From positions 62,001 to 126,000 of IMG/VR virus record IMGVR_UViG_3300046559_001153: a stretch of 64,000 bases of DNA. One strand, written 5' to 3'. The position numbers and the translations under genes are program-made. The notes below the pieces were generated by a model. That model was not told where the DNA came from. It saw nothing but the letters and a program-made list of their open reading frames with translations, and did not search any database. Below, piece after piece: positions 4,416 through 64,000 of the stretch. Position 1 is the stretch's first letter. Every line of letters begins with the position of its first letter.

Positions 4416-5282
4416 ATGTCATTTGTAAGTAAGATCAAGAAAGTGACGGTCAAATCGTTGACGGCGAAGCAATCAGCTGCGGCGCCCACCGACATCGATT
4501 TCAGCAAGAGAGCGACTTACAACCTGCTGATTACTCCAGGTCTGGCCGCCTGGATATTGGAAAACAAGAATGGGTCCAATCTTCGTAAGACGATGGTCAG
4601 GGCTCATGTTCGCCTCCTCGGCGATACGATGGCTCGAGGTGACTGGGTGGACAATCACGTACAGCCAATTATTTTTGACGAAAACGGGGATCTGGCTGAT
4701 GGGCAGCACCGTATGCAGTGCGTCGTCGATACCGGTAAATCGATCTGGATGAAAGTTGAAGCGGGTTGTCCGGACGCATGGTCCAAAACATATGACACCG
4801 TGCAACCTCGTGGTTTGAAGGATCATGCGCCTTTCTCTAACGATCCCAAGCTCAACGGGTACATGGCTACGATCGTTCGCCAATACCAGACCCTGCTGAC
4901 TGGCAATGGCCGTACTCAGCCGACGTCCATTTACGAAGCGCTCTACTTGGAGCACGCTGACGCGATCAACTTTGCTGCACTGTTTGCATCATCGAGGGTC
5001 AAGGCAGTGACACGGGCCGGCGTTTCCTGCGCACTACTGGAAATGTTCGAACGCGGACGAGCACAGTCCAAAGCCTTTGCCGAGTCTCTTCGTGTGCCAG
5101 ACGGCCCTATTCAGCCCGCACGAATGCTTCGCGACTGGTGCCAGCGCAATTCGTCTTCCGGCGGCGGGACTACCGGCACACGCCACTGGTTTGACCGATC
5201 GGTATTCTGCATGAATGCGTTTTTCGAGGGCCGCGATATCACCCAGGTGAAGCCCGGCATCTGGGGCGTGAAGAAGAAATAG
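4416..5282 (+). CDS. ParB/Srx-like (DGQHR) domain protein
   Basis: IIFDENGDLADGQHR motif typical of ParB-N-like phage proteins. Confidence 0.6.
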   Translation: MSFVSKIKKVTVKSLTAKQSAAAPTDIDFSKRATYNLLITPGLAAWILENKNGSNLRKTMVRAHVRLLGDTMARGDWVDNHVQPIIFDENGDLADGQHRMQCVVDTGKSIWMKVEAGCPDAWSKTYDTVQPRGLKDHAPFSNDPKLNGYMATIVRQYQTLLTGNGRTQPTSIYEALYLEHADAINFAALFASSRVKAVTRAGVSCALLEMFERGRAQSKAFAESLRVPDGPIQPARMLRDWCQRNSSSGGGTTGTRHWFDRSVFCMNAFFEGRDITQVKPGIWGVKKK

Positions 5283-11030: not shown

Positions 11031-11831
11031 ATGATCTCGATCAATGTCCTGCTATTCGGCGACTACACCGACCTGGCCGAACGCTGTTTGCGTTCGATCT
11101 GTCCAATTCTGATACCCGGGAAAATCTCGGATGTCAGAATTGGACTTAACGGTGTGTCGCAGGAATCGCGGGGTGTTGTCAGAGACTGGCTGGCTACTCT
11201 GCCTGACGGGATCGACTGGAAAGTGTTTGATCCCGGCAAGAACGTCTGGAAGTATCCGCTCATGCGTCGCATGTTTCATAATGACAAACCACCGATGGTC
11301 ATGGGGGCCCAGGTAGCAAAGCCCCCATTGACCATGTGGTTCGACGACGACTCTCATTTGCAATTCGCTGACGCCGTTTCTGGTGCTCGATTTTTGAATC
11401 TGATTGAGTCCGAGTTTACAAAGCCGGCAGTTGGCATGCTGGGCGAGATCTGGCAGAAAAGGTTATTGCCTGGCCAGGAAGAGTGGGTCAAGAGCCGTCC
11501 CTGGTACGCGGGTGGCCCCGTTGCCACTATGACCAGATTTGCTACCGGTGGATGGTGGACCATTCGCACATCGCTGCTTCGCAAGTTTGACTGGCCCGAT
11601 CCGACCATTCGCCATAACGGGGGCGACACGTCACTTGCTCAAATGCTCTTTCAGCAGAAGTATCAGATCATTGATATCCGCGGCCGTCATTGGGTCAAAG
11701 TCAATGACGCCCCTCGTCGCGGGGAGAATCAGACTCCGGCGGGCCAAAATTTCAAGCGTGGTGTCGACGTCGATTTGTCGCACCACGATTTCACATGTCA
11801 GGTTTTATCTAGAGGAGCTGACCGGTTATGA
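11031..11831 (+). CDS. GT-A fold (family 2-like) glycosyltransferase
   Basis: ISINVLLFG...AERCLRSI...RIGLNG N-terminal strand/helix pattern; WFDDD DxD motif; HNGGD. Confidence 0.65.
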   Translation: MISINVLLFGDYTDLAERCLRSICPILIPGKISDVRIGLNGVSQESRGVVRDWLATLPDGIDWKVFDPGKNVWKYPLMRRMFHNDKPPMVMGAQVAKPPLTMWFDDDSHLQFADAVSGARFLNLIESEFTKPAVGMLGEIWQKRLLPGQEEWVKSRPWYAGGPVATMTRFATGGWWTIRTSLLRKFDWPDPTIRHNGGDTSLAQMLFQQKYQIIDIRGRHWVKVNDAPRRGENQTPAGQNFKRGVDVDLSHHDFTCQVLSRGADRL

Positions 11832-12277
11832 ATTTCACTTACCTGCCGCCAATCCTGGCGTCGGTGGCAAATTACTCTGACCCATCCCCAACGGCTGACC
11901 AGCCGATTTTTGCTCTTCCTCGTAAGGGGTCTGAACAGTGGGCAGTGCCTTTGACACTGGATGGGGACGAGACCAAGTGGTCTCTCACGTCACAGGGAGA
12001 CATTGTTCGTTTGCCCCTGCATTCGCCGTCTGGCGGTTATAACACGCCGGAAGCGCGTGACGTGTCTGTGATTGCCGCGGCCATTGCTCTGGGGATGCAA
12101 CTCGCATCCCAGTTCAAGGAACGTTTCTGCGACGTCGACCATCCGCGGTTTTCGCCGGTCGCCGTCCAGCTGGTAATCGGGGATGCTGTGCACGAGTTTG
12201 CGCCCGGGGGAATCGGCCCGAATTCTCCGGCAATGTTTCGCTTCTATTTGGGCATCGCTTTTCGAGACAAGGACTAA
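11828..12277 (+). CDS. Hypothetical protein
   Basis: ATGA-coupled ORF in gene array. Confidence 0.65.
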   Translation: MNFTYLPPILASVANYSDPSPTADQPIFALPRKGSEQWAVPLTLDGDETKWSLTSQGDIVRLPLHSPSGGYNTPEARDVSVIAAAIALGMQLASQFKERFCDVDHPRFSPVAVQLVIGDAVHEFAPGGIGPNSPAMFRFYLGIAFRDKD

Positions 12278-54787: not shown

Positions 54788-55081
54788 ATGAGCTTGTACA
54801 TGACAATCGATGCGGCCCAGCTGAGAGCAGCACTGTCTGAGATCGAGGCAGCTGAGCAGAATGGATTCAATCATTGTCTGGCTGTGTTTTTCATCGCTGA
54901 GGCCAGTCGTCGCCTGTCTGGCACAAAAGCCGAGTACAGCGACATGATCGAGCGGGCCCATCCAACAGACGAGCGATTCGACTGGGGACGGTACCAGGAA
55001 GTGAGCCGGGAAAACAAGTTTGTGCGTGGCGAACTTGTACCAATCAAACCGAGAAAGAAAAGGAAGCACCGCGATGCTTAA
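54788..55081 (+). CDS. Hypothetical protein
   Basis: AAGGAG SD. Confidence 0.65.
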   Translation: MSLYMTIDAAQLRAALSEIEAAEQNGFNHCLAVFFIAEASRRLSGTKAEYSDMIERAHPTDERFDWGRYQEVSRENKFVRGELVPIKPRKKRKHRDA

Positions 55082-55388
55082 AATCAACCGTGACGCGAAC
55101 CGTAAGGCCACTGACCACTGGGATGAACTGCAGGTTGTGCACGACGCGCTGGTCAAAACGCGAGATGATTGCGAGAAAGTTCCGTCCAAGAGATTGGGCG
55201 TCCGCATCTTCCATGAGGGAAATGAGATGATGTGGGATTCTCTGGTGCTCCCGAAAACGATAATCGCGGAGCTGCAGACCTGGCTGGTGGCCCGACTGAA
55301 GGAAGAGATCCACGCTACGAGAGTGACACAAGAACGGATTTGGACTGCTGAGGTCAAGGATCTGCACGCCAAAAACGGGACGAAGTGA
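55074..55388 (+). CDS. Hypothetical protein
   Basis: AAGGA SD. Confidence 0.6.
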   Translation: MLKINRDANRKATDHWDELQVVHDALVKTRDDCEKVPSKRLGVRIFHEGNEMMWDSLVLPKTIIAELQTWLVARLKEEIHATRVTQERIWTAEVKDLHAKNGTK

Positions 55389-55612
55389 TGGCCGACGTCG
55401 TCAGTCTGAAGTCTGTGGGCTGTGCTTACCGAAACGGACGTCGGATGCCCGGTTGGGGCGTCATTTCGCTCGATGACGGCAGGAAGCTGTATTGCCGCGA
55501 AGCTGAGAACAGTTTTGACGCCATGTGTGCCCGGGCCGAATTGCTCGGGCACACAGTTTCTAGAATGCGAGCCCGTCTCGATCACTGGGTGGAGACGGGC
55601 CAGTTTATTTGA
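55385..55612 (+). CDS. Hypothetical protein
   Basis: GTGA coupling. Confidence 0.6.
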   Translation: MMADVVSLKSVGCAYRNGRRMPGWGVISLDDGRKLYCREAENSFDAMCARAELLGHTVSRMRARLDHWVETGQFI

Positions 55613-55968
55613 AGGACTCACGGATGCGAATTTTATCACCGATGACATTGGCGAGGATCATCGCCTTGCTGCCCGCCAGGTCTCAATTTGTATTGATAAC
55701 CGCGGTCAAGGAAGGCACGGGAGTCGACACGAACATCACTGATCCAAAGGTGGCTAAGATGTTCGTGCTCGAGACGGGGGCTGAGATGAGCCCTAAGGAT
55801 GCGGTCTGTCTTCATGACACGGATGGGGCTGGTGATTGTCAGCTGTGCGTCCGTGATCGAACGAAATGTCCACTCAACCCAGGAGAGAAGAATGGCGACG
55901 AGAAAGCTCACACACCAGATGATGGCCGACCTGTCCCTGCACAAACTGTTGGAGATCGGCCTGCGTGA
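55609..55968 (+). CDS. Hypothetical protein
   Basis: TTGA coupling; CLHDTDGAGDCQLC motif. Confidence 0.5.
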   Translation: MKDSRMRILSPMTLARIIALLPARSQFVLITAVKEGTGVDTNITDPKVAKMFVLETGAEMSPKDAVCLHDTDGAGDCQLCVRDRTKCPLNPGEKNGDEKAHTPDDGRPVPAQTVGDRPA

Positions 55969-56380
55969 TGTCAAGAAGCACGCGAAGACCCCAGGCTGTG
56001 TTGTGTACATGGGCACATGGCTGGAGACGTTGCAACCGCGTGCCCTTGACGACGAAGAGCCGGAGGCGCTGGCCACGTGTTTTGCTTGTATGGCCGGGTC
56101 TGTGATGAAGCAGACGTTTGGTATGTCACGTCATGAAGACATCGAGATTATGACGTCTACGCTACCCGAAGACGACCGCCGCGCAGCCTGTGAATGGACG
56201 ACAGTTTTGGACCATTTGCGATGCGGGCAAGTTGACAAGGCACTGACTGCGCTGGGACGCGATAGCGGTAAGCGTCTGCCCGTGAAGAATCGCAAGACAC
56301 CCGTGTACTCCAAAAGTCCGGCTAAGTGGTTCAAGGCCATGGAAAAGCTTCACGCTGAACTCAAAGCCGCCAACATCTAA
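55892..56380 (+). CDS. Hypothetical protein, paralog family B member 2
   Basis: LHKLLEIGLRDVKKH...CFACMAGSV...LDHLRCGQV...WFKAMEKL.A.LKAANI. Confidence 0.75.
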   Translation: MATRKLTHQMMADLSLHKLLEIGLRDVKKHAKTPGCVVYMGTWLETLQPRALDDEEPEALATCFACMAGSVMKQTFGMSRHEDIEIMTSTLPEDDRRAACEWTTVLDHLRCGQVDKALTALGRDSGKRLPVKNRKTPVYSKSPAKWFKAMEKLHAELKAANI

Positions 56381-56393
56381 AAAGGAGCCGACA

Positions 56394-56840
56394 ATGCCCG
56401 AGACCAAACTGACCTGGCAGGAACTGAACACGTGGAAGCTGCACGAGCTGCTTGACTTGGCTCTGACCGATCTGAAGAAGCACGAGAATACGTCAGGCTG
56501 TGTCGTGAATATGTCCGTTTTCTTGTGGACCGGTGAAAGGCCTGGGGATAAATGCCAGGCTTGTCTGGCTGGAACTGTGTTACGACATTCGTTGGGACTG
56601 CTAAACCTGAGAGATTTGGTCAGCGGCGAGTCGCTTGATGTGCGGCAAGAGGCTCGCCGGTGGGTTTACGCAATCGATTACCTGCGGGCGGGCAGCGTGA
56701 GCCTGGCGCAAGAGGAGATGGATCGAGCAGAGCCGGCCGAGCCGATGGACCGAGTGGTTGTGGACTACCACGACGACCGCGACATGTGGCTCCACGACAT
56801 GACTCTGTTGCTGAGCGATCTTCGAGCGGCGAACCTTTAA
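56394..56840 (+). CDS. Hypothetical protein, paralog family B member 3
   Basis: KLHELLDLALTDLKKH...CQACLAGTV...IDYLRAGSV...LL.DLRAANL. Confidence 0.75.
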   Translation: MPETKLTWQELNTWKLHELLDLALTDLKKHENTSGCVVNMSVFLWTGERPGDKCQACLAGTVLRHSLGLLNLRDLVSGESLDVRQEARRWVYAIDYLRAGSVSLAQEEMDRAEPAEPMDRVVVDYHDDRDMWLHDMTLLLSDLRAANL

Positions 56841-56857
56841 TACCGAAGGAGAGGGAT

Positions 56858-57508
56858 ATGACCAGTAGCGATCGAGCGCGTGTGGGTTGTCTGCTGATAG
56901 CGTTGTTTGCGTTCATGGCGATCTACAGCGGTATCGCGTGGCACTGGTGGCATGACCCGGTCTCCCCATTCAAACCCGGAGACCGGGTCGTTCATCGGCA
57001 GAATCCCAAGGTCCGTGGCATATTCGTGGCCCTGGTCGTCGAGAACGGGATCCAGATGGCTTGTGTTTCGACAGACCGCGAAGCCATCTGGGAGACGGTC
57101 AATCCTTTCACCATTCCGTACGTTCAGAAGATGCCCGTGGTCCTATTGCGAAAGGAAGAACTGAGTGATAAACAACCAGATGTACGAGAGGGCCCGCCAG
57201 ACGCTCCAGGTCGCGACGGGGAACAACCAGAGCAGAATCACCCAAGACGCCTTCAACGACGGGTGGAAGTCCCTCCTGGAGTTCATGACGCGACCGCCGA
57301 CAATGCTGGCCAGAAAGAGAGACACGTACGAGGTCTTTTACTGGACTGGCGACAATGTCGTCGAGCTACACGCGTTCATGCGGGGCACGCTGCTGCCAAA
57401 GCATTTTCCACCCATGCAGTGGATCACTCGTCGCAGCAGCACCGACGAGATCAATTACTGGTCATCAGACGAATTCAACCATGTCTTCGAACTGATCGCC
57501 GAGCTTAA
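56858..57508 (+). CDS. Membrane-anchored hypothetical protein (C-terminal about 115 codons overlap next gene)
   Basis: AAGGAGAGG SD; TM helix then FKPGDRVVH; no stop at the junction with 57165. Confidence 0.5.
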   Translation: MTSSDRARVGCLLIALFAFMAIYSGIAWHWWHDPVSPFKPGDRVVHRQNPKVRGIFVALVVENGIQMACVSTDREAIWETVNPFTIPYVQKMPVVLLRKEELSDKQPDVREGPPDAPGRDGEQPEQNHPRRLQRRVEVPPGVHDATADNAGQKERHVRGLLLDWRQCRRATRVHAGHAAAKAFSTHAVDHSSQQHRRDQLLVIRRIQPCLRTDRRA

Positions 57509-57572
57509 ACCACTGGAAGAAGACGACGCTTCGGCATCGAAACCGCGGTCTGTAGGGGAGGGAACACATTGA
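57165..57572 (+). CDS. Hypothetical protein
   Basis: GAAAGGA SD then GTG. Confidence 0.65.
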   Translation: MINNQMYERARQTLQVATGNNQSRITQDAFNDGWKSLLEFMTRPPTMLARKRDTYEVFYWTGDNVVELHAFMRGTLLPKHFPPMQWITRRSSTDEINYWSSDEFNHVFELIAELKPLEEDDASASKPRSVGEGTH

Positions 57573-57922
57573 TGAAACGAATTGACCCAAGTCTGATTCC
57601 CGATCTGTACGTCAAACACCAGCTGACTCCGGAGCAGGGAACGACACTAAAAAAGGACGAGGGCAAAGCCTGTCTGTTGGGGCTGCTGTACGTCGACGAG
57701 TGTTCGCCGGTGATACTTAATGACCCGGGTTTTGTTATTGCAATCGCCCAGCTGGCGAGGCGCGGGTATGACCCAGAGTACCTGCGGGGTTTGATGACTG
57801 GTTTTGATGGTCGCCGTCTGAAAATTGACGAGGACGAGTCTGAATACGTGATTGACGGATTCGAAGATGGCCGAACTGCCGTTAAGCTCCTAATTGCGAA
57901 AGGGATGGAATGGTTGAGATGA
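57569..57922 (+). CDS. Hypothetical protein, paralog family C member 2
   Basis: RIDPSLIPDL...CLLGLL...YLRGLMTGFDG. Confidence 0.7.
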   Translation: MMKRIDPSLIPDLYVKHQLTPEQGTTLKKDEGKACLLGLLYVDECSPVILNDPGFVIAIAQLARRGYDPEYLRGLMTGFDGRRLKIDEDESEYVIDGFEDGRTAVKLLIAKGMEWLR

Positions 57923-58320
57923 CCGAGAGAGACGAGGCCATCCGTGGGATTGCTGTCAGCGTGTTCAAGCAGCACGACCTGTACACGCTGCACAGCCAGG
58001 TGATTGTGCATGGCAAGTCTATTCGCTTGGAGCTGTTTCCTCACGCGGTACGACATCAGCTGAGTGCCTTGTCGTTGGAGCTCGCGCCCGAGCTGAGGAT
58101 GTACCTCTTGGGGATTTACCTGCCGGAAGAGTGGTGGGGGATGGGCTTCGGTCAACAGTTGTACGACCTGGCTTGTGAGCTGGCGTCCGAGCTGGTGCTG
58201 GAAGACGTAGTGCAGTATCCGGTAGGGAAGACGGCTCGCGGAGAGCTGCGGCGAGATTACCTGCTTCGCCGCGGGTGGATGCCGTGTGAGGATGATCAAG
58301 TCCGCCGGTTTGTAATCTGA
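57910..58320 (+). CDS. GNAT-family acetyltransferase-like protein
   Basis: LLGIYLPEEWWGMGFGQQLY resembles acetyl-CoA-binding motif A; ...YLLRRGW. Confidence 0.55.
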   Translation: MVEMTERDEAIRGIAVSVFKQHDLYTLHSQVIVHGKSIRLELFPHAVRHQLSALSLELAPELRMYLLGIYLPEEWWGMGFGQQLYDLACELASELVLEDVVQYPVGKTARGELRRDYLLRRGWMPCEDDQVRRFVI

Positions 58321-58328
58321 CCGGCGGT

Positions 58329-58346
58329 TACCTTTTTAACAAGTTA
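58329..58346. promoter_or_regulatory. 18-bp palindromic motif copy 7 (TACCTTTTTAACAAGTTA)
   Basis: Intergenic, follows GC hairpin 58302-58327, precedes GAAAGG SD. Confidence 0.6.
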
Positions 58347-58366
58347 CAGAAAGGGACGGTGCGACG

Positions 58367-58774
58367 ATGTCTACAAATGGGACGGAAAAGCAGAGCGTGA
58401 TCACACTGGCTGGAGGCTTCGCTGCCTGGCTGACAACAGACGAGGTTAACGCCTGGCACGGGTTTTTGAGTGAACAAGAGCTCTGGAAGGAGTACTGTAA
58501 GGCTGACGCGCAGACTGAGGCGCTGAGTTTCATTTTTCAGGGCCACAACCCGCTGGGATATTCGGCGTTGGACTATGTGGTCGCTCAAGACAACGTTCAA
58601 CGGTTGGCTGACGAGCTTTTCAAGGTCGGCAAGGCCTGGTACGAAGAACACATTCTTCCGACCAGGCGTGACGAGAACACCGACAGGCAGCAGACGGTTG
58701 CCGATCTGGTCGACCAGCTTCTGAATGCAAAGCCGGTTCTTGATAAGCACAACGAGGCAACGGACGGGTCGTAG
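58367..58774 (+). CDS. Hypothetical protein
   Basis: GAAAGGG SD. Confidence 0.65.
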   Translation: MSTNGTEKQSVITLAGGFAAWLTTDEVNAWHGFLSEQELWKEYCKADAQTEALSFIFQGHNPLGYSALDYVVAQDNVQRLADELFKVGKAWYEEHILPTRRDENTDRQQTVADLVDQLLNAKPVLDKHNEATDGS

Positions 58775-58776
58775 GC

Positions 58777-58971
58777 ATGAAAAACGTTCGACCTTTGACG
58801 CCGGATGAAATGGCGGCCATACCGGCTATTCAGGCCATAGTCGGCGGTGGAGACTTTGGCTACTGCATGGACTGTGATGGTCTGCGAACAATCGCGGGTG
58901 GAAAGTGTTCCGGTTGTCAGAGGCCATTAGCTAAGGCAATACCACCAGGAGGAGACAACCATCTTGATTGA
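58777..58971 (+). CDS. Small Zn-finger-like protein
   Basis: CMDC ... CSGC. Confidence 0.6.
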   Translation: MKNVRPLTPDEMAAIPAIQAIVGGGDFGYCMDCDGLRTIAGGKCSGCQRPLAKAIPPGGDNHLD

Positions 58972-59191
58972 CAATGCTGACCGTGACGAGATCGATGCGC
59001 AGATCCATGAAATTGCGCATCGATCTCTAATTGAAATGCACACCGCGGGTATCATGGACAGTCTGGCCAAAGTCGAGTTCAGCGTTCGAGAGAATCTGAT
59101 TCGACAGGTGCTCTCAGCGATTAAAGAAGAGTACTGCCTGCATTGCGGGTCGGATTCGGGTTCTTCGTGCCCCTGTCAAAACGACGATTGA
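58964..59191 (+). CDS. Hypothetical protein
   Basis: AGGAGG SD, TTG start; C-terminal YCLHCG...C.C.ND. Confidence 0.6.
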   Translation: MIDNADRDEIDAQIHEIAHRSLIEMHTAGIMDSLAKVEFSVRENLIRQVLSAIKEEYCLHCGSDSGSSCPCQNDD

Positions 59192-59203
59192 AAGGAGAGT
59201 TCA

Positions 59204-59524
59204 ATGAGTGATAAATTTGCTAACGATTTCATCCGTTGTCCACGCTGTCCACAGCCATCTAGTCGAGCCGGGCACAAGATCGGACCTACGCTGGTCTGTG
59301 TTGCACGCAATTACAGCGGTTGCAGTGTGGACATTGCTCAGTGCCCGGAATGCGGTAAGGCGTGGGAGATCAGCTACAAGGTGGCCGATATGACTCGAGT
59401 GCCGTCCTGGGATGGGCTAACTCGTCAACAACAGGAAGCAGCAGAGGCTGAGCAGAAAGAGCGCGATAAGCTCACGCGAAAGGTGGCGTTTGAAAAGTTG
59501 AAGACCGAGTTTGATCCGGATTAA
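59204..59524 (+). CDS. Zn-ribbon protein
   Basis: CPRC ... CPECGK. Confidence 0.65.
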   Translation: MSDKFANDFIRCPRCPQPSSRAGHKIGPTLVCVARNYSGCSVDIAQCPECGKAWEISYKVADMTRVPSWDGLTRQQQEAAEAEQKERDKLTRKVAFEKLKTEFDPD

Positions 59525-59584
59525 CCACTGACTGGCGGAGTGTAACCGAAGAACCTGGTCACTTTTTCTTCAAGAAAGGACATT

Positions 59585-60028
59585 ATGAGCGAAGGAACAA
59601 CCGTACATCCCGAACTGATGACCAAGCTGCACGAGCTGTTGGAACTAGCTCTGCACGACATGGAACTGTTCGAGCAACAGCCGGACTGCCACGTAGACAT
59701 GGATACCTGGCTTCGCCCTGGGTGGCCTGACGAGGGTGAGAATCCGAAGCACTGTTATGCTTGCTTGGCCGGCACGGTATGGCGAATGACGCTCGGGCTG
59801 GAAGACACACCATCCGCCACGGCTCCGAACTGGGCCAATGCCCTGAATCAGTTGCGATATGGTCGTGTCTCTGACGCCTACTTTTATCTTCCTGGTTGGG
59901 AAAAGGACGAAAACGACCGGGATGTCAGATACCTTAACAGAATCGTTTGGGATTACCATTCGTCACGGGTGCACTGGTGGAAGGCCATGAGGAAGCTGCT
60001 GGCCGATTTGAAAGAAGCCGACGTCTAA
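59585..60028 (+). CDS. Hypothetical protein, paralog family B member 4
   Basis: KLHELLELALHDM...CYACLAGTV...LNQLRYGRV...WWKAMRKLLADLKEADV. Confidence 0.75.
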   Translation: MSEGTTVHPELMTKLHELLELALHDMELFEQQPDCHVDMDTWLRPGWPDEGENPKHCYACLAGTVWRMTLGLEDTPSATAPNWANALNQLRYGRVSDAYFYLPGWEKDENDRDVRYLNRIVWDYHSSRVHWWKAMRKLLADLKEADV

Positions 60029-60042
60029 AAGAAAGAATCGTG

Positions 60043-61113
60043 ATGCAGTACAAAACTCTTGAAGAATTAGAAAAGCGGTTGAGTGAAGCGATTAACGATC
60101 CCCGGTCGTTGTTTGGCGCCGGGGATGATGTCGACACAACGCTGCAACGGATCCAGATCTTCTGCCATCCGGACAAGCATCCCTACCGTCGAGAGACGGC
60201 GACCAGGCTATTCGTCCTGGCTGGTCAACTGGCTGACAAGGCCCGCGGACCGGCCATGACAGTTACATCGCCCACCCGAGCGTACACGGTGGAACGGCGC
60301 CTGGCCTCAGGAGACGTGGCTGACGTCTACGTGGCGACAGGCAGGGACATCGTCAAACCTGTCGCCACCGTGACCAGGAACCGCATCCTGCTGCGTCCTG
60401 GGGTGTCGGAGCCCGATCAGACCTACACGATCAAGGTCAGCCGCATTCAGGGCGCCGAGGCCCTTCTGGACCGCGAGCAGAAGGTCCTGCTGGCGATTGA
60501 GAAGGCGGCGATCGATAAGAACCTGGACAACATGCGGTCCTATTACCCGACGTTGGTCGAGTCGTTCCCGGCCAAACAGCGGTTCCAGCGGCGGGTCAAC
60601 GTGTTCGTCCACCAGCCGGGCATGTTCACGTTCGAGCAGGTGGCTGATAAGCACCATCGTCTGGATGCCAGGCACAGTGTGTGGATCTTTAAGCGGTTGC
60701 TGACAGCCCTGGCGTTCGCCCACCAGCAGGGCATTGTCCATTCTGCCATCACGCCCGAGCACGTTATGATCAGGCCTGAGAATCACCAGGTCCAGATTAT
60801 TGGCTGGGGCCAGTCGGTTGCCGTGGGGCAGCCTATCAAGAGCTACCCGCTTAAGTACAAGCCGTACTACCCGGATGAGGCGTTCGCGAAGAGGCCGACC
60901 CACTCGGGGGCTGACATTCACATGGCGGCGTTCCTCGTCAGCCGGTGGACGGCATTTAAGGCGTCAGAAGAGTCGCTACGGATGTTTTTCAACGGCTGCA
61001 GGTGCGAAGGCCAGTGGCAGCGGCCGGTTGACGGGTTTGAGCTGTACGACGAGTTCGATCGCCTGGCTAAGCGTGTGTACGGGGATCCCAAATTCGTAGA
61101 ACTGAAAATGTGA
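60043..61113 (+). CDS. J-domain (HPD) / protein kinase-like fusion with degenerate catalytic motifs
   Basis: FCHPDKH...AT.LF; LASGDVADVY, IKVSR, RE.KVL, LAFAHQQGIVHSAITPEHVMI (HRD to HSA), IIGWG (DFG to GWG). Confidence 0.8.
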   Translation: MQYKTLEELEKRLSEAINDPRSLFGAGDDVDTTLQRIQIFCHPDKHPYRRETATRLFVLAGQLADKARGPAMTVTSPTRAYTVERRLASGDVADVYVATGRDIVKPVATVTRNRILLRPGVSEPDQTYTIKVSRIQGAEALLDREQKVLLAIEKAAIDKNLDNMRSYYPTLVESFPAKQRFQRRVNVFVHQPGMFTFEQVADKHHRLDARHSVWIFKRLLTALAFAHQQGIVHSAITPEHVMIRPENHQVQIIGWGQSVAVGQPIKSYPLKYKPYYPDEAFAKRPTHSGADIHMAAFLVSRWTAFKASEESLRMFFNGCRCEGQWQRPVDGFELYDEFDRLAKRVYGDPKFVELKM

Positions 61114-61117
61114 GACC

Positions 61118-61462
61118 ATGACTGAAATCTCGAATTCTCTGCAGTTGAAGATCATTGAAGCCGGTCTCATAGCTATCGTGAGCAAGGGCGGCAAACAAAT
61201 TCAACTGCGGGGCAACGGACGGACAATCACTGTGTTCCCGGATGGTGGCCGGGCCGGTCCATCGGTTTACGTCGGTGGCGTGACAGGCAGGTATCCAGGC
61301 ACTAAAAACATGACCGAGGAACAGGCTCTGGCTTTGGCGATCGAACTGGGCAGTGCTCGATGTACGGCGGCAAAGAAGCCAGTGTCTGGGAACTCGCTGG
61401 ACGAGATCAACGCAGAGCTGGCTATGGAACGGAATCGAAAAGATGAGGATCGCAAACAGTAG
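61118..61462 (+). CDS. Hypothetical protein
   Basis: ORF in array. Confidence 0.6.
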   Translation: MTEISNSLQLKIIEAGLIAIVSKGGKQIQLRGNGRTITVFPDGGRAGPSVYVGGVTGRYPGTKNMTEEQALALAIELGSARCTAAKKPVSGNSLDEINAELAMERNRKDEDRKQ

Positions 61463-61514
61463 GACCAATTGATAAGTATGAAGTCATCCGCGTACAGCGA
61501 GCAGGAGAAACGAT

Positions 61515-61892
61515 ATGACCGAATCGAAAGACGATATGTCTCTACTTGATCTTCTCAGAACGCCTGTCTCTGAGATTGAAAAAGCCGAAATTGCTGAAGT
61601 AATCGCAGCGGCAATGACCCACCCGGACGGTTCGAAAAACATGACAGCCTTGGCTATCCGCAGGCTCATGTTCCAGCATGGAGAACTCCAACAGCAACTC
61701 GCAGCCGTGACGAGAGAGCGTGACGATGCGGTTGCTGCTTATCGCGTCCTGGAAGCAGAAGGCAACAGGTGCATCGACGAATATATTTCTGGCAAGCTGA
61801 CGCAGTTGCGGGTCTGGTCAGACCGAATGGCGACGGCAATTGCCAAATCCCGCAACTCCCTGCCAGCCCCGACCGACAGGAGCGGAGCGTAA
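61515..61892 (+). CDS. Hypothetical coiled-coil protein
   Basis: AGGAGA SD; LQQQLAAVTRERDDA. Confidence 0.65.
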   Translation: MTESKDDMSLLDLLRTPVSEIEKAEIAEVIAAAMTHPDGSKNMTALAIRRLMFQHGELQQQLAAVTRERDDAVAAYRVLEAEGNRCIDEYISGKLTQLRVWSDRMATAIAKSRNSLPAPTDRSGA

Positions 61893-62039
61893 AGATGGGC
61901 ATAGCCTTTTTGAACATCTTTGGGAACTGGCGTGTACCGGATGGAAGGCTTTGCACTTTAATTGCCGACACATGGCCAGTTTTTAGCGACACCACTGTTT
62001 CCGATCTGATGTTGGCAGGATTTTGAGACCAACAATCGC

Positions 62040-62057
62040 GTTGACTGACCACTGACC
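62040..62057. repeat. 18-bp direct repeat, left copy (GTTGACTGACCACTGACC)
   Basis: Identical to 62733-62750. Confidence 0.85.
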
Positions 62058-62072
62058 ACGAAAGGAACCACC

Positions 62073-62741
62073 ATGGCAATCCGAAATGAAAACGGAATCC
62101 TGTATGATGACAGAAACAACTCCGCGAGCATTGAGTATTGGGGCAGCGAGGAAGCGGCGCGAAAGGCGCTAGAGTCATTGGTGAACTGCTCCGACTGCTC
62201 CCGCTGCTCCGGCTGCTCCGACTGCTCCCGCTGCTCCGGCTGCTCCGACTGCTCCCGCTGCTCCGACTGCTCCCGCTGCTCCGACTGCTCCCGCTGCTCC
62301 GACTGCTCCGACTGCTCCCGCTGCTCCGACTGCTCCCGCTGCTCCGACTGCTCCGGCTGCTCCGACTGCTCCCGCTGCTCCGACTGCTCCCGCTGCTACG
62401 ACTGCTCCCGCTGCTCCGGCTGCTCCCGCATAGTGCCTCAAAAAGTCACTATTGAAATTCCATTTATCACCGAAATCCACAAGACAATCTATGCCGCAGT
62501 CTCACAGCCAAAAGCTCTGAACATGAGCGACTGGCACACGTGCGAGACGACGCATTGCCGGGCTGGATGGGTCGTGACGCTCGCGGGCGAGGCGGGTAAG
62601 AAATTGGAGAAACAAACGTCGCCACTGTTCGCAGCCCAACAAATCTACAAAGCCAGCGGGTATGAGATTTCGCCTGTGCGGTTCTTCGACTCGAACGAGG
62701 AAGCGATGGCCGATATGAAGCGTCTGGCGGAAGTTGACTGA
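62073..62741 (+). CDS. (Cys-Ser-X)27 repeat protein with C-terminal WH-C-x2-HC-x-AGW domain
   Basis: GAAAGGA SD; CSDCSRCSG... then ALNMSDWHTCETTHCRAGW. Confidence 0.8.
   Translation: MAIRNENGILYDDRNNSASIEYWGSEEAARKALESLVNCSDCSRCSGCSDCSRCSGCSDCSRCSDCSRCSDCSRCSDCSDCSRCSDCSRCSDCSGCSDCSRCSDCSRCYDCSRCSGCSRIVPQKVTIEIPFITEIHKTIYAAVSQPKALNMSDWHTCETTHCRAGWVVTLAGEAGKKLEKQTSPLFAAQQIYKASGYEISPVRFFDSNEEAMADMKRLAEVD
62187..62429. repeat. 9-bp tandem repeat, 27 units (TGCTCC-GAC/CGC/GGC)
   Basis: Counted unit by unit; one TGCTACGAC variant. Confidence 0.95.
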
Positions 62742-62750
62742 CCACTGACC
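62733..62750. repeat. 18-bp direct repeat, right copy
   Basis: Identical to 62040-62057; overlaps the stop region of the 62073 gene. Confidence 0.85.
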
Positions 62751-62769
62751 CGAGAGAGGAGAGAGGGAT

Positions 62770-62946
62770 ATGCTCCAGAAAATTGAAATCGAAGACGTCA
62801 GCGATTGCGAATCGTGCACCGCCCGCCATAAGGGGATACTGGAGTTTCTGGCTACAACGAAAGCGAAAGTCTTGACGGACGTGATTTGCAGCGAATGCGG
62901 GCGCGAGACTCATATATTTGTGGCCGACGAAAGCGAAAGGGGATGA
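62770..62946 (+). CDS. Small Zn-binding protein (58 aa)
   Basis: CESC ... CSECG; GAGGG SD; ATGA coupling. Confidence 0.55.
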   Translation: MLQKIEIEDVSDCESCTARHKGILEFLATTKAKVLTDVICSECGRETHIFVADESERG

Positions 62947-63167
62947 CGATGATTCTTTACCCAGTTGGCATATTCTTCATGCGTCGCCGCTCTGACGGCA
63001 AACTCTATCGCGGCGCGAAGTTCTGGCGTTGGACAAAATCGTGGCGACGGGCGGCCGCGTTACCAGAGTGGCATTGGATTGCCTTTGCATTGAATAAATA
63101 TCCCGACTCGGAACTTGTGACGCTCGAGCAATTGATTGACGAAGAATCGACCACGAAAGGGGGATGA
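62943..63167 (+). CDS. Hypothetical protein
   Basis: GAAAGGGG SD. Confidence 0.55.
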   Translation: MTMILYPVGIFFMRRRSDGKLYRGAKFWRWTKSWRRAAALPEWHWIAFALNKYPDSELVTLEQLIDEESTTKGG

Positions 63168-63415
63168 CGATGGTGGCGACTAAAGACAAGCCGTGTGGCA
63201 ATCCGATGTGTGGAGTATCGACCGGGATTCATGGCGGCCTGACTTTCGGCAGCGGAGAATTGGACGAGTATGGCTTCTGGCAAGTACCGTGTTGTGCCTG
63301 CGCGAGAGCACACGAGAAATCGCAGCCGCAGGATGGTAACTGCTGGCCATTTACGAACGAACAACTATGGGGTACCGCCCAGACTATGAAAGGAATGACC
63401 GATGCCGATGAATGA
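63164..63415 (+). CDS. Small Cys-rich protein
   Basis: CG..C..STGIH.GLTFG.G.LD..GFW..PC..CAR.HE...CWP. Confidence 0.65.
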   Translation: MTMVATKDKPCGNPMCGVSTGIHGGLTFGSGELDEYGFWQVPCCACARAHEKSQPQDGNCWPFTNEQLWGTAQTMKGMTDADE

Positions 63416-64000
63416 TTCACAATACCTTGACTGGGCGACGCGTCTCGATGCGGCGATTGCTCCCGCGCACGGTAAGGTGGCTGCAATTTTTGCGGAGATT
63501 CGCGAAGTCCTGCGTACTGTCCGACGGGAGAACGACGAACTCAAGTCGCGGAATGTGGAGTTGCAGGCCCAGTTGAATCAGGTGCATTCGCACGTCAAGA
63601 CGGCGTTGGAGCAGCTTCGCGTTGACGTGTTGGAGTCGGGCTACATTCCTGATTCGTGGACGCTTGTGGAGGAATGCAAGATGTCTGGCGATAAACTCGC
63701 AAGAGTGGCGGAATGGCATCGGCGGATGGTTAAGGCTGAGGACGAACTCGCCCGGCTGAAGCATCCGCGATCCTGCGAGTGGGTCTACCCGCCGTTTGAC
63801 GAACCGAGGAAGATGCCGGTTGTCGGCGAGATCATCGAGTGGGAGATGGAGAAAAGCTGCGGACTCGGTTTACAAGTTATGCGATGGTCAGAGGAATGCT
63901 CACTCTGCTACGCGACCAAATGGCGTTACGTCGTCGCTCCCGCCGCACCATCCACATTCTGCCCGCATTGCGGAAGGGAATTGTCATTCACGAATGATAC
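63402..64000 (+). CDS. Hypothetical protein, truncated by window end
   Basis: GAAAGGA SD; frame MPMNDSQYLDWATRLD... stays open to position 64000. Confidence 0.55.
   Translation, partial: MPMNDSQYLDWATRLDAAIAPAHGKVAAIFAEIREVLRTVRRENDELKSRNVELQAQLNQVHSHVKTALEQLRVDVLESGYIPDSWTLVEECKMSGDKLARVAEWHRRMVKAEDELARLKHPRSCEWVYPPFDEPRKMPVVGEIIEWEMEKSCGLGLQVMRWSEECSLCYATKWRYVVAPAAPSTFCPHCGRELSFTND

What the first reader, a model, noticed from the sequence alone, without database searches (positions are those of the whole stretch)
60043..61113. Phage-encoded J-domain/pseudokinase fusion
Truncated J-domain with intact HPD (the DnaK-stimulating motif) fused to an ePK-like fold retaining the beta3 Lys and alphaC Glu but with HRD to HSA and DFG to GWG, so both catalytic Asp residues are missing. 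Similar fusions occur in bacterial stress/conflict gene neighbourhoods, usually with partner genes that are not seen here. Inference: recruits host DnaK to a target or acts as a decoy for kinase-based defence.
Basis: partly seen in the sequence, partly recalled or inferred. Interest (0 to 1): 0.6.

Follow-up and report, generated by a model that had tools for sequence, protein, structure and literature searches.

The report
J-domain pseudokinase of a conserved phage module
This jumbo-phage gene encodes a chaperone-recruiting J-domain fused to a catalytically degenerate kinase fold, and it is one subunit of a widespread, uncharacterised gene set (pseudokinase, vWA protein, PurA-like enzyme) shared by large phages and some soil bacteria.

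Summary
Window 60043-61113 (+) encodes a 356-aa protein with two parts:
- A short N-terminal J-domain. HPD is invariant in relatives, and a family profile hits only J-domains in the PDB.
- An ePK-like fold (AF2 pLDDT 92; PknB is the top fold match). It keeps the beta3 Lys (K131) and alphaC Glu (E145), but reads HSA for HRD, His for the catalytic-loop Asn, and GWG for DFG.

The interpretation needs revision.
- The degenerate motifs are ancestral to the family. No catalytic Asp occurs in any of 38 loci, bacterial or viral. A phage-made decoy of a host kinase is therefore unlikely.
- The "missing partners" do exist. In about 40 loci (Planctomycetota, Actinomycetota, IMG/VR phages, more than 200 cluster C mycobacteriophages) the gene sits next to a vWA/MIDAS protein and a divergent PurA-family ligase. 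A Nudix-wHTH (NrtR-like) gene is often present too.
- In this phage the vWA and PurA-like genes lie 4.1 and 7 kb downstream, just past the window edge.
- A control-checked complex prediction supports binding of the pseudokinase C-lobe to the vWA protein (ipSAE 0.73; best control 0.00).
- The phage has no Hsp70 gene.

Best reading: a non-catalytic adaptor that tethers the vWA/PurA-like machinery and couples it to host DnaK. The module's output is unknown. I found no literature on it.

The parts
60043..61113 (+). Whole gene: J-domain/pseudokinase, 356 aa plus stop (P0001)
   Evidence: ORF list and translation. phrog_3043 at 6.9e-30. 56 plus 148 homologs found.
60043..60252 (+). Short J-domain (residues 1-70): helices 6-18, 20-24, 29-40, then HPD, then a long helix 47-68 that runs into the kinase N-lobe. 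No helix IV.
   Evidence: The N-terminal profile (A2) hits only J-domains in the PDB, best 1.7e-7. 9 of 13 members hit Pfam DnaJ. Secondary structure from AF2.
60166..60174 (+). HPD tripeptide (H42-P43-D44), followed by Lys as in canonical HPD(K/R)
   Evidence: Invariant in 13 aligned N-termini. Present in 22 of 38 family loci.
60259..61110 (+). ePK-like pseudokinase domain (residues 73-356)
   Evidence: AF2 pLDDT 92.4. Foldseek top hits are PknB and other ePKs at E about 1e-11 to 1e-10. Profile hits to CK2 and titin kinases.
60304..60333 (+). Degenerate Gly-rich loop (residues 88-97, A-S-G-D-V-A-D-V-Y-V). Only the middle Gly is kept. The acidic residues D91 and D94 are nearly invariant in the family.
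   Evidence: Alignment to the CK2 G-loop. Conservation in alignments A1 and A3.
60433..60435 (+). K131, the beta3 Lys equivalent
   Evidence: Aligned to the CK2 beta3 Lys. Nearly invariant in the family; Arg in one locus.
60475..60477 (+). E145, the alphaC Glu equivalent
   Evidence: Invariant in 55 sequences. Aligned to the CK2 alphaC Glu.
60739..60762 (+). Catalytic-loop remnant H233-S-A-I-T-P-E-H240. HRD reads HSA and the catalytic-loop Asn is His.
   Evidence: Pairwise alignments to CK2 and profile alignment. The family-wide pattern is H-(G/S/T)-A-x-x-P-x-H.
60802..60810 (+). G254-W255-G256 in place of DFG/DWG
   Evidence: Alignment to CK2 D-W-G. GWG is found in the planctomycete/own clade, DWC in most other viral members; W255 is invariant.
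60973..61089 (+). C-lobe helices alphaG to alphaI (residues 311-349). Together with alphaE (214-228) this is the predicted docking surface for the vWA partner.
   Evidence: complex prediction interface list: ipSAE 0.73, best of 3 controls 0.00. R327, P328 and W332 are nearly invariant.
61118..64000 (+). Block of small or unknown ORFs (61118-61462, 61515-61892, 62073-62741, 62770-62946, 63164-63415, and 63402 onward) that separates this gene from its vWA partner. In relatives the two genes are adjacent.
   Evidence: ORF list. No Pfam hits for these ORFs. In the closest relative, L006, KIN ends at 4451 and the vWA gene starts at 4510.

Best explanation
P0001 is the non-catalytic adaptor subunit of a conserved, uncharacterised gene module. 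The module consists of a (J-domain-)pseudokinase, a vWA/MIDAS protein ('X', phrog_2971), a divergent PurA-family ligase (phrog_1211), and often a Nudix-wHTH (NrtR-like) protein.

Proposed mechanism:
1. The kinase-like domain does not transfer phosphate in the canonical way. No family member has the HRD Asp, nearly all have His for the catalytic-loop Asn, and this clade has also lost the DFG Asp.
2. The domain keeps a folded, active-like core (the K131-E145 pair). It may still bind a nucleotide.
3. Its C-lobe (alphaE and alphaG-alphaI) docks the vWA protein. This leaves the vWA MIDAS face and the N-terminal J-domain free.
4. The J-domain, through its invariant HPD, recruits the host's DnaK, because the phage encodes no Hsp70. 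DnaK then assembles, activates or recycles the vWA/PurA-like complex, or a client held by the MIDAS site.
5. The enzymatic output of the module comes from the PurA-like ligase. It presumably makes an adenylosuccinate-type N6-substituted purine nucleotide from a substrate other than IMP.

Status of each step:
- Shown: domain identities, motif states, module conservation, and the absence of a phage Hsp70.
- Supported by prediction only: pseudokinase-vWA binding.
- Inferred: DnaK recruitment, lack of catalysis, and the module's chemistry and purpose.
For: **Domains and motifs.**

**Family-wide loss of the catalytic Asp, in bacteria and phages alike.** 38 of 38 loci read H-(G/S/T)-A.

**Module conservation.**
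- tblastn and all-vs-all ORF clustering of 41 loci give KIN in 41, X in 40 and PurA-like in 36. The remaining loci are cut by contig ends.
- A Nudix-wHTH gene is present in 14 loci. No other partner is conserved.
- KIN and X are usually separated by 0-30 nt.

**Where the module occurs.**
- Planctomycetota MAGs.
- Actinomycetota chromosomes, as a four-gene operon whose Nudix-wHTH gene overlaps the KIN start by 4 nt.
- 26 IMG/VR contigs.
- 203 phage records, nearly all cluster C mycobacteriophages, for example Alice gp246-gp247-gp249.
- This phage carries all three genes.

**Identity of X.** X is a vWA protein: AF2 pLDDT 90.2, Foldseek hits to integrin beta-I and SpaC vWFA domains at about 1e-6, and an invariant D-x-T-x-S MIDAS motif.

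**Complex prediction, KIN plus X.** Median ipSAE 0.73 (0.75, 0.73, 0.67). Best of 3 controls 0.00. The runs share at least 72% of contacts and the partner pLDDT is at least 79. That mark was reached by 58 of 80 solved complexes and 2 of 110 mismatched pairs. These counts hold only roughly because my own alignments were used. The J-domain and the MIDAS residues lie outside the interface.

**No phage chaperone partner.** The 224-kb phage has no HSP70 hit and no second DnaJ hit.

**PurA-like gene.** It is an extra paralog alongside a canonical purA in three planctomycete genomes. It keeps the P-loop Asp and the catalytic His but has changed residues in the IMP 5'-phosphate loop.
Against: - P0001's own N-terminus gives no Pfam DnaJ hit. 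It is about 5 residues short in helix II and lacks helix IV, so DnaK stimulation may be weak or lost.
- J-less members exist: the crown Gemmataceae clade and some viral copies. DnaK coupling is therefore not essential to the module.
- The conserved K131/E145 pair, the conserved G-loop acidic residues D91 and D94, and His240 could together form a non-canonical active site.
- Most viral members outside this clade keep the DFG Asp, as D-W-C.
- In this phage the three genes are not contiguous. Spacers of 4.1 kb and 1.9 kb separate them, so co-expression is not assured.
- The binding evidence is a model's confidence, not a measurement.
- No experimental or expression data exist. Only DNA runs hold the sequence.
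Confidence: 0.5

Rival explanations
1. It is an atypical but active enzyme. The kinase fold would use relocated residues (G-loop Asp91/Asp94, His233/His240, and in other clades the Asp/Cys of D-W-C) to phosphorylate, AMPylate or otherwise modify the vWA protein, the PurA-like enzyme or a small molecule. This would parallel WNK, CASK or SelO, which looked dead by motif.
For: - K131 is nearly invariant and E145 invariant. D91, D94, H233, H240 and W255 are invariant or nearly so.
- The DFG Asp is retained, with an adjacent Cys, in most viral members.
- The fold is confidently predicted. Its conformational state was not assessed.
- That motif-dead kinases can be active is established knowledge; it was not tested here.
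Against: - No member has an acidic residue at the HRD position.
- The clade containing this phage has lost the DFG Asp, the catalytic-loop Asn and the catalytic-loop Lys together.
- The candidate Asp/Cys pair is not conserved across the family, so it cannot be the common catalytic device.
Confidence: 0.2
2. One reading: a stand-alone host-manipulation factor. It would either hijack DnaK in the way the RB43 Rki J-protein does, or act as a decoy or sponge for kinase-based anti-phage defence, independently of the neighbouring genes.
For: - HPD is intact and the phage has no Hsp70.
- A phage J-protein that binds DnaK has a precedent (Rki, PMC3486835).
- Weak similarity to defence kinases such as MkoA, PD-T4-6, PglW and MAD6.
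- In this phage the gene is physically separated from its usual partners.
Against: - The same degenerate pseudokinase occurs in bacterial chromosomes with the same partners, so it is not a phage-specific mimic.
- Co-occurrence with X and the PurA-like gene is near-universal.
- Binding to X is predicted.
- Hits to defence kinases score 18-48 bits, against cut-offs of 460-990 bits for the NCBIfam defence-kinase models (PglW, MAD6). That is only generic kinase-fold similarity.
Confidence: 0.12
3. The J-like segment is a structural relic. It serves as an N-terminal helical cap of the pseudokinase and no longer engages Hsp70. In this view the protein is simply the regulatory or scaffold subunit of the vWA/PurA-like complex.
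For: - P0001's N-terminus alone fails the Pfam DnaJ model. Helix II is shortened and helix IV is absent.
- The high pTM (0.86) suggests the J-helices are packed in a fixed position on the N-lobe.
- J-less members of the family evidently function.
Against: - HPD followed by K/R is strictly conserved across lineages that share only about 25-50% identity in this segment. That is hard to explain without selection for Hsp70 contact.
- The basic residue in helix II and the Phe in helix III typical of J-domains are kept.
Confidence: 0.15

Closest known systems
Rki (ORF 057w) of T4-like phage RB43, the first functional phage-encoded J-domain protein (PMC3486835)
   Same: It is phage-encoded with an N-terminal J-domain, and it acts through the host DnaK because the phage has no Hsp70.
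   Different: Rki has no kinase-like domain and no vWA or PurA-like partners. Its described role is to stabilise sigma32. No sequence relationship was tested here.
Eukaryotic GAK/auxilin-2, and the DNAJB1-PRKACA fusion (PDB 4wb7)
   Same: A J-domain and an ePK fold sit in one polypeptide. 4wb7 appears among the Foldseek hits (rank 16). NAK-family AAK1 gives the highest TM-scores among the listed hits (0.57).
   Different: Those kinases are catalytically active. GAK has its J-domain at the C-terminus together with clathrin-binding modules. The DNAJB1 fusion is a somatic accident. GAK's architecture is from general knowledge and was not tested here.
Bacterial Ser/Thr pseudokinase families reviewed by O'Boyle et al. 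2025 (ActPs1-3, GLW, CP1, DYD, DLHK; PMC12599244)
   Same: These are bacterial ePK-fold proteins with degraded catalytic motifs and unknown functions.
   Different: The review contains no mention of DnaJ or J-domain, vWA, adenylosuccinate or phage. The sections I read describe other domain partners such as PQQ and COG3899. This family appears not to be among them.
vWA plus Ser/Thr kinase gene pairs such as the TerY-P triads (vWA, kinase, PP2C phosphatase) proposed from comparative genomics. Recalled from memory, not checked here.
   Same: A cytoplasmic vWA/MIDAS protein is genetically coupled to an ePK-fold protein in a stress or conflict-type accessory operon.
   Different: Here the kinase is degenerate. 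No phosphatase was found among the conserved neighbours. The third component is a PurA-family ligase, and a J-domain and a Nudix-wHTH gene are added.
PurA and PurZ (adenylosuccinate synthetase; the 2-aminoadenine pathway of Z-genome phages), for the module's enzyme
   Same: The partner enzyme P0060 matches Pfam Adenylsucc_synt (7.6e-40). It keeps the P-loop Asp and the catalytic His. In this phage it lies near a NUDIX gene.
   Different: It scores 100-113 bits against purA equivalog cut-offs of about 400, and 35 bits against the PurZ cut-off of 300. It is therefore neither PurA nor PurZ by those models. Neither PurA nor PurZ is known to work with a vWA protein or a pseudokinase.

Membership tests
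J-domain proteins (Hsp70 co-chaperones) | HPD tripeptide in the loop between helices II and III | tested here: met
   H42-P43-D44 lies between AF2 helices 29-40 and 47-68. It is invariant in 13 aligned homologous N-termini.
J-domain proteins (Hsp70 co-chaperones) | Sequence membership in the J-domain family (Pfam PF00226 or an equivalent profile match) | tested here: inconclusive
   P0001:1-75 alone gives no Pfam hit at E<=1. However, 9 of 13 orthologous N-termini hit DnaJ (best 1e-7), and the family profile hits 65 PDB J-domains and nothing else (best 1.7e-7).
J-domain proteins (Hsp70 co-chaperones) | Complete four-helix J fold | tested here: not met
   The AF2 model has no helix IV, and helix III runs straight into the kinase N-lobe. 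By my own count of residues against the canonical DnaJ J-domain, helix II is about 5 residues short.
J-domain proteins (Hsp70 co-chaperones) | HPD-dependent stimulation of Hsp70/DnaK ATPase | not testable with these tools
   This needs biochemistry. The only indirect evidence is that the phage genome has no HSP70.
Eukaryotic-like protein kinases (ePK, Pfam Pkinase) | Bilobal kinase fold | tested here: met
   AF2 pLDDT 92.4. Foldseek PknB at 1.9e-11 with TM (target) about 0.69.
Eukaryotic-like protein kinases (ePK, Pfam Pkinase) | Score above the Pfam gathering threshold | tested here: not met
   28.4 bits against a cut-off of 31.7.
Eukaryotic-like protein kinases (ePK, Pfam Pkinase) | beta3 Lys and alphaC Glu | tested here: met
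   K131 and E145 align to the CK2 Lys and Glu. They are nearly invariant and invariant, respectively, in the family.
Eukaryotic-like protein kinases (ePK, Pfam Pkinase) | Catalytic Asp of HRD, catalytic-loop Asn, and metal-binding Asp of DFG | tested here: not met
   The three positions read HSA, His240 and GWG. No locus of 38 has an Asp at the HRD position.
Pseudokinase (operational definition) | ePK fold lacking at least one canonical catalytic residue | tested here: met
   Three of the canonical residues are missing.
Pseudokinase (operational definition) | Absence of phosphotransfer activity | not testable with these tools
   This needs kinase and nucleotide-binding assays.
phrog_3043 / cluster C mycobacteriophage 'serine/threonine kinase' family | Significant profile match and full-length homology | tested here: met
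   phrog_3043 at 6.9e-30. 34% identity to Alice gp246 over residues 127-356, with the same length and an HPD in its N-terminus.
Conserved module: pseudokinase, vWA, PurA-like (with or without Nudix-wHTH), defined here | vWA (phrog_2971) and PurA-like (phrog_1211) genes in the same genome and neighbourhood | tested here: met
   X lies at L008:7218-8264 and the PurA-like gene at L008:10136-11356, on the same strand and 4.1 and 7 kb downstream.
Conserved module: pseudokinase, vWA, PurA-like (with or without Nudix-wHTH), defined here | Immediate adjacency or translational coupling of the pseudokinase and vWA genes | tested here: not met
   In almost all other loci the gap is 0-30 nt. Here 5-6 unrelated ORFs intervene.
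Known defence-system kinases (BREX PglW, MADS MAD6, Mokosh MkoA, PD-T4-6) | Score above the family cut-off, and the system's partner genes | tested here: not met
   Scores are 18-48 bits over the catalytic-loop region only, against cut-offs of 460-990 bits for the NCBIfam models. X and the PurA-like protein have no PADLOC hits.

The most novel reading that the evidence does not exclude
The four genes (Nudix-wHTH, J-pseudokinase, vWA, PurA-like) form a previously unrecognised, DnaK-coupled nucleotide-transforming system. It is exchanged between large phages and their hosts, and the versions track host phylum. In this reading a pseudokinase-vWA sensor/adaptor gates a PurA-family ligase that makes a non-canonical purine nucleotide. 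That product could be a signal, a DNA-precursor modification, or a repair of nucleotide or NAD/ADPR-related damage inflicted by immunity. Phages would deploy it as a counter-defence or takeover device.
Probability: 0.25. Interest if true: 0.85.

Novelty: new variant of a known kind. Interest (0 to 1): 0.62.

Why it matters
J-domain proteins decide what Hsp70 works on, and pseudokinases are scaffolds or switches. A natural fusion of the two, tied to a vWA protein and a PurA-family enzyme, suggests a chaperone-gated nucleotide pathway that has not been described.

The same module is present in more than 200 sequenced cluster C mycobacteriophages (Bxz1, Alice, Catera). These phages grow on Mycobacterium smegmatis and can be engineered, so the question is directly testable.

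The result also corrects existing annotation. These genes are currently labelled 'serine/threonine kinase', 'molecular chaperone DnaJ', 'hypothetical protein' and 'PurA-like adenylosuccinate synthetase', with no link drawn between them.

Tried and rejected
- **Close DNA relatives.** A megablast of window 55000-64000 against the phage collection found nothing.
- **Direct J-domain hit.** Pfam on P0001, whole and N-terminus alone, gave no DnaJ hit. The J-domain call rests on the family profile.
- **Sequence identification of X.** Pfam, NCBIfam, PADLOC and a PDB profile search all gave nothing. Only the fold search identified it as vWA.
- **PurZ / Z-genome reading of the PurA-like gene.** Considered and not adopted. 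The PurZ model scores 35 bits against a cut-off of 300. The 191-aa gene that follows has no HD hit. The same paralog sits in bacterial chromosomes alongside a canonical purA.
- **Known defence-system membership.** Rejected.
- **Literature.** Nine searches found no paper on the fusion or the module. The search with 'PurA-like' was uninformative. The 2025 review of bacterial pseudokinases does not mention J-domain, vWA, adenylosuccinate or phage.
- **Promoter and terminator scan.** Nothing above shuffled expectation.
- **Expression.** Only DNA (soil and rhizosphere) runs hold the sequence.
- **Antisense ORF.** ORF 60307-60921 (204 aa) recurs in 18 loci, but only as the shadow of the conserved coding frame, so it is not counted as a gene.
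- **Complex prediction.** It failed three times on machine errors before the accepted job ran. Only the KIN-X pair could be tested. J-domain with DnaK, X with PurA-like, and KIN with PurA-like were not tested.
- **Large representative protein search.** Not used, because the word search and family scans had already resolved the family.
Full report
**1. What is in the sequence**

Window 60043-61113 (+) is an intact ORF of 356 codons (P0001).
- A longer TTG start at 59947 would overlap the upstream ORF that ends at 60028.
- Homologs start at the position of the ATG at 60043.
- One database gene call (P0003, 334 aa) starts 22 codons further in.

The window is part of a 224,270-bp IMG/VR virus record with direct terminal repeats, estimated complete. 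It is a jumbo phage.
- Elsewhere the window carries a DNA polymerase, a UvsX-like recombinase and a thymidylate synthase. It has no tRNAs.
- The same DNA occurs in many soil and rhizosphere metagenomes. No RNA run holds it.

**2. The two domains**

*Kinase-like part*
- Pfam Pkinase matches at E 1.3e-6 but below the gathering score (28.4 against 31.7 bits).
- PHROG phrog_3043 ('kinase') matches at 6.9e-30.
- An AlphaFold2 model built on 55 homologs is confident (pLDDT 92.4, pTM 0.86).
- Its best PDB matches are all ePKs, led by the M. tuberculosis PknB kinase domain at 1.9e-11. The DNAJB1-PKA chimera 4wb7 is also among the hits.

*Motif states.* Pairwise and profile alignments to CK2alpha give these assignments:

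| Canonical element | State in P0001 |
|---|---|
| Gly-rich loop | A-S-G-D-V-A-D-V |
| beta3 Lys | K131 (kept) |
| alphaC Glu | E145 (kept) |
| HRD | H233-S-A |
| Catalytic-loop Lys | Thr |
| Catalytic-loop Asn | H240 |
| D(F/W)G | G254-W-G |

*N-terminal part*
- P0001 alone does not hit Pfam DnaJ.
- The equivalent N-termini of 13 divergent homologs align with an invariant HPD.
- 9 of those 13 hit Pfam DnaJ, best 1e-7.
- Their profile hits 65 PDB chains, all J-domains, best 1.7e-7.
- The model shows helix 29-40, the HPD loop, then a long helix 47-68 that leads directly into the N-lobe. There is no helix IV.
- 'Truncated J-domain with intact HPD' is an accurate description.

**3. The family**

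Word-based searches found 56 relatives of P0001 and 148 relatives of the mycobacteriophage homolog.

Across 38 loci the motif states are as follows:
- The HRD position is always H-(G/S/T)-A. No acidic residue occurs there in any locus.
- The catalytic-loop Asn is His in nearly all members.
- K131 is kept in 37 loci and E145 in all.
- The DFG position splits the family. It is G-W-G in the clade that holds this phage and the Planctomycetota copies. It is D-W-C in most other viral members and in Alice gp246.
- HPD is present in 22 of the 38 loci. It is absent from a crown group of Gemmataceae copies and from a few viral copies. Those have other N-termini or none.

A quick maximum-likelihood tree gives the following groupings:
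- P0001 pairs with a metagenomic relative, L006 (support 100).
- That pair sits inside a supported clade (96) with 12 planctomycete copies and one viral copy.
- The mycobacteriophage copy groups next to the actinobacterial copies.
- The gene therefore tracks host phylum, which suggests a planctomycete host for this phage. This is an inference.

The degenerate catalytic motifs are ancestral and are shared by the chromosomal bacterial copies. This argues against the idea that the phage made a dead copy of a host kinase to serve as a decoy.

**4. The partners**

The gene almost never stands alone.
- In three planctomycete contigs it is followed directly by a gene of about 330 aa with no Pfam hit ('X'), and then by a PF00709 (adenylosuccinate synthetase) gene.
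- The closest relative, L006, has the same three genes.
- Mycobacteriophage Alice has the same arrangement: gp246, gp247, gp249.
- tblastn, ORF mapping and all-vs-all clustering over 41 non-redundant loci give the pseudokinase in 41, X in 40 and PurA-like in 36. The missing cases are cut by contig ends.
- Exactly one further recurrent partner appears, a protein of about 243 aa in 14 loci.
- That fourth protein is a Nudix plus NrtR-type winged-helix protein with an intact Nudix box.
- In Micromonospora, Longispora and Dactylosporangium its gene overlaps the pseudokinase start by 4 nt, giving a four-gene operon.

*X*
- It belongs to phrog_2971, of unknown function.
- Its alignment has an invariant D-x-T-x-S motif, a conserved N-terminal M-G-G-x-x-W, and a conserved C-terminal tail.
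- AF2 gives pLDDT 90.2. Foldseek matches integrin beta-I and SpaC vWFA domains at about 1e-6.
- X is therefore a cytoplasmic vWA/MIDAS protein.
- In Alice the homolog carries a Hint/intein-like insert.

*PurA-like enzyme (P0060)*
- It matches Pfam Adenylsucc_synt at 7.6e-40.
- It scores far below the NCBIfam cut-offs for PurA (about 100-113 bits against about 400) and for PurZ (35 against 300).
- It keeps the P-loop Asp and the catalytic His. It differs in the loop that binds the IMP phosphate, and its C-terminal third does not align.
- Three planctomycete genomes carry a canonical purA (556-582 bits) in addition to this paralog (187-201 bits).
- The X profile was found in only 22 of 401 sampled Planctomycetota genomes. 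The module is accessory, not housekeeping.

*In this phage*
- X lies at L008:7218-8264 and the PurA-like gene at L008:10136-11356. Window coordinate equals L008 coordinate plus 58000, so these are 65218-66264 and 68136-69356, beyond the window's end.
- A 191-aa unknown gene and a NUDIX gene follow.
- Between the pseudokinase and X lie 5-6 unrelated small ORFs. The closest relative lacks them.

**5. Physical link**

A control-checked complex prediction for the pseudokinase with X supports binding.
- ipSAE was 0.75, 0.73 and 0.67 in three runs (median 0.73). The best of three controls scored 0.00.
- The runs share at least 72% of contacts. The partner's pLDDT is at least 79.
- The mark was reached by 58 of 80 solved complexes and by 2 of 110 mismatched pairs. 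The tool warns that these counts hold only roughly, because my own alignments were used.
- On the pseudokinase the interface uses the C-lobe: residues 159-166, alphaE 214-228, and alphaG-alphaI 311-349. This includes the nearly invariant R327, P328 and W332.
- On X it uses the N-terminal helix (6-20), residues 102-115, 148-153 and 304-307.
- Neither the J-domain nor the MIDAS residues (85-89) are in the interface.
- This is a model's confidence, not a measurement.

**6. Chaperone side**

The phage genome has no HSP70 hit and no second DnaJ hit. A functional J-domain would have to work with the host's DnaK. The precedent is Rki of phage RB43 (PMC3486835).

**7. Most likely mechanism (confidence about 0.5)**

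The protein is a non-catalytic adaptor.
- Its pseudokinase C-lobe holds the vWA protein.
- Its J-domain brings ATP-bound host DnaK to that complex, or to whatever the free MIDAS site holds, to assemble, activate or recycle it.
- The PurA-family ligase supplies the module's chemistry.
- In bacteria the Nudix-wHTH protein probably regulates or feeds the system. NrtR-type proteins sense ADP-ribose; this is established knowledge of that family and was not tested here.

Status of each element:
- Shown: domains, motifs, module conservation, and the lack of a phage Hsp70.
- Predicted: pseudokinase-vWA binding.
- Inferred: DnaK recruitment, absence of catalysis, and the substrate and biological role.

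Rivals:
- An atypical active enzyme using G-loop Asp and His residues (0.2).
- A relic J-segment with no Hsp70 function (0.15).
- The stand-alone hijacker or decoy reading (0.12).

**8. Comparison with known systems**
- Rki is the closest phage J-domain protein, but it has no kinase fold and no such partners.
- GAK/auxilin-2 and the DNAJB1-PKA fusion combine a J-domain with a kinase, but those kinases are active.
- The 2025 review of bacterial pseudokinase families contains no mention of a J-domain, vWA, adenylosuccinate or phage.
- PADLOC and NCBIfam give only generic kinase-fold similarity to defence kinases.
- vWA-kinase-phosphatase triads are a loose analogy recalled from memory.
- Nine literature searches found no description of this fusion or this module.
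- Current annotations treat the genes separately: 'serine/threonine kinase', 'molecular chaperone DnaJ', hypothetical, and 'PurA-like adenylosuccinate synthetase'.

**9. Verdict**
The architecture is right and DnaK coupling is plausible. The decoy idea is unlikely. The partners are present, but outside the window.
- The protein is a new variant within known kinds (J-domain proteins and pseudokinases).
- The module it belongs to appears undescribed, and it can be tested experimentally in cluster C mycobacteriophages.

Noticed in passing
window 62073-62741 (tandem repeat 62186-62429): A 222-aa ORF contains about 14 copies of an 18-nt repeat (or about 9 copies at period 27). The repeat encodes a Cys-rich C-S-D-C-S-R array. 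Its C-terminal part matches unknown-function PHROGs 31265 and 15341.
   Followed up: partly
L008:10136-12573 (window-equivalent 68136-70573, outside the window): A divergent PurA-family gene, a 191-aa unknown gene and a NUDIX hydrolase form a small nucleotide-metabolism cluster. In the relative L006 the cluster is PurA-like, HD_4, an unannotated 107-aa ORF and NUDIX. This superficially resembles Z-genome gene sets, but the PurZ model scores only 35 bits.
   Followed up: partly
L001:3756-5540 (Mycobacterium phage Alice gp247): The vWA partner in cluster C mycobacteriophages is 594 aa. Only the first 190 aa or so align to X. Weak Hint and intein-splicing hits follow, suggesting an intein or Hint insertion in this gene.
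   Followed up: no
L022-L045 and L001, pseudokinase DFG position: Most viral members outside the planctomycete clade read D-W-C-(Y)-S where this phage reads G-W-G-Q-S. Asp and Cys there, next to the conserved His240 equivalent, could form a metal site or a Cys-His-Asp-type centre that is absent from this clade.
   Followed up: no
L011-L020 (Gemmataceae MAG contigs): The crown planctomycete clade has lost the J-domain. An intact-Nudix-box NrtR-like gene lies directly upstream. Longer database variants carry an unrelated conserved N-terminus (M-A-G-x-x-H-F-L-R-C-V-G...) of unknown nature.
   Followed up: partly
window 60307-60921 (- strand): A 204-aa antisense ORF lies inside the pseudokinase gene and recurs in 18 related loci. 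I read it as a shadow of the conserved, GC-rich coding frame and not as a gene.
   Followed up: partly
window 60040-60111: The start site is ambiguous. A GTG directly precedes the ATG at 60043. A public gene call (P0003, 334 aa) starts at a TTG 22 codons downstream, which would remove the first J-domain helix.
   Followed up: partly
L008:9248-9826 and L006:6727-7460, 11385-12117: Several DUF6197 paralogs are scattered around the module in this phage and in its closest relative.
   Followed up: no
L049 (Dactylosporangium chromosome): The actinobacterial four-gene operon sits among an N6 methyltransferase, HTH/Gp49 toxin-antitoxin-like genes, a DEAD helicase and an RNA 2'-phosphotransferase. This looks like a defence-island setting.
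   Followed up: no
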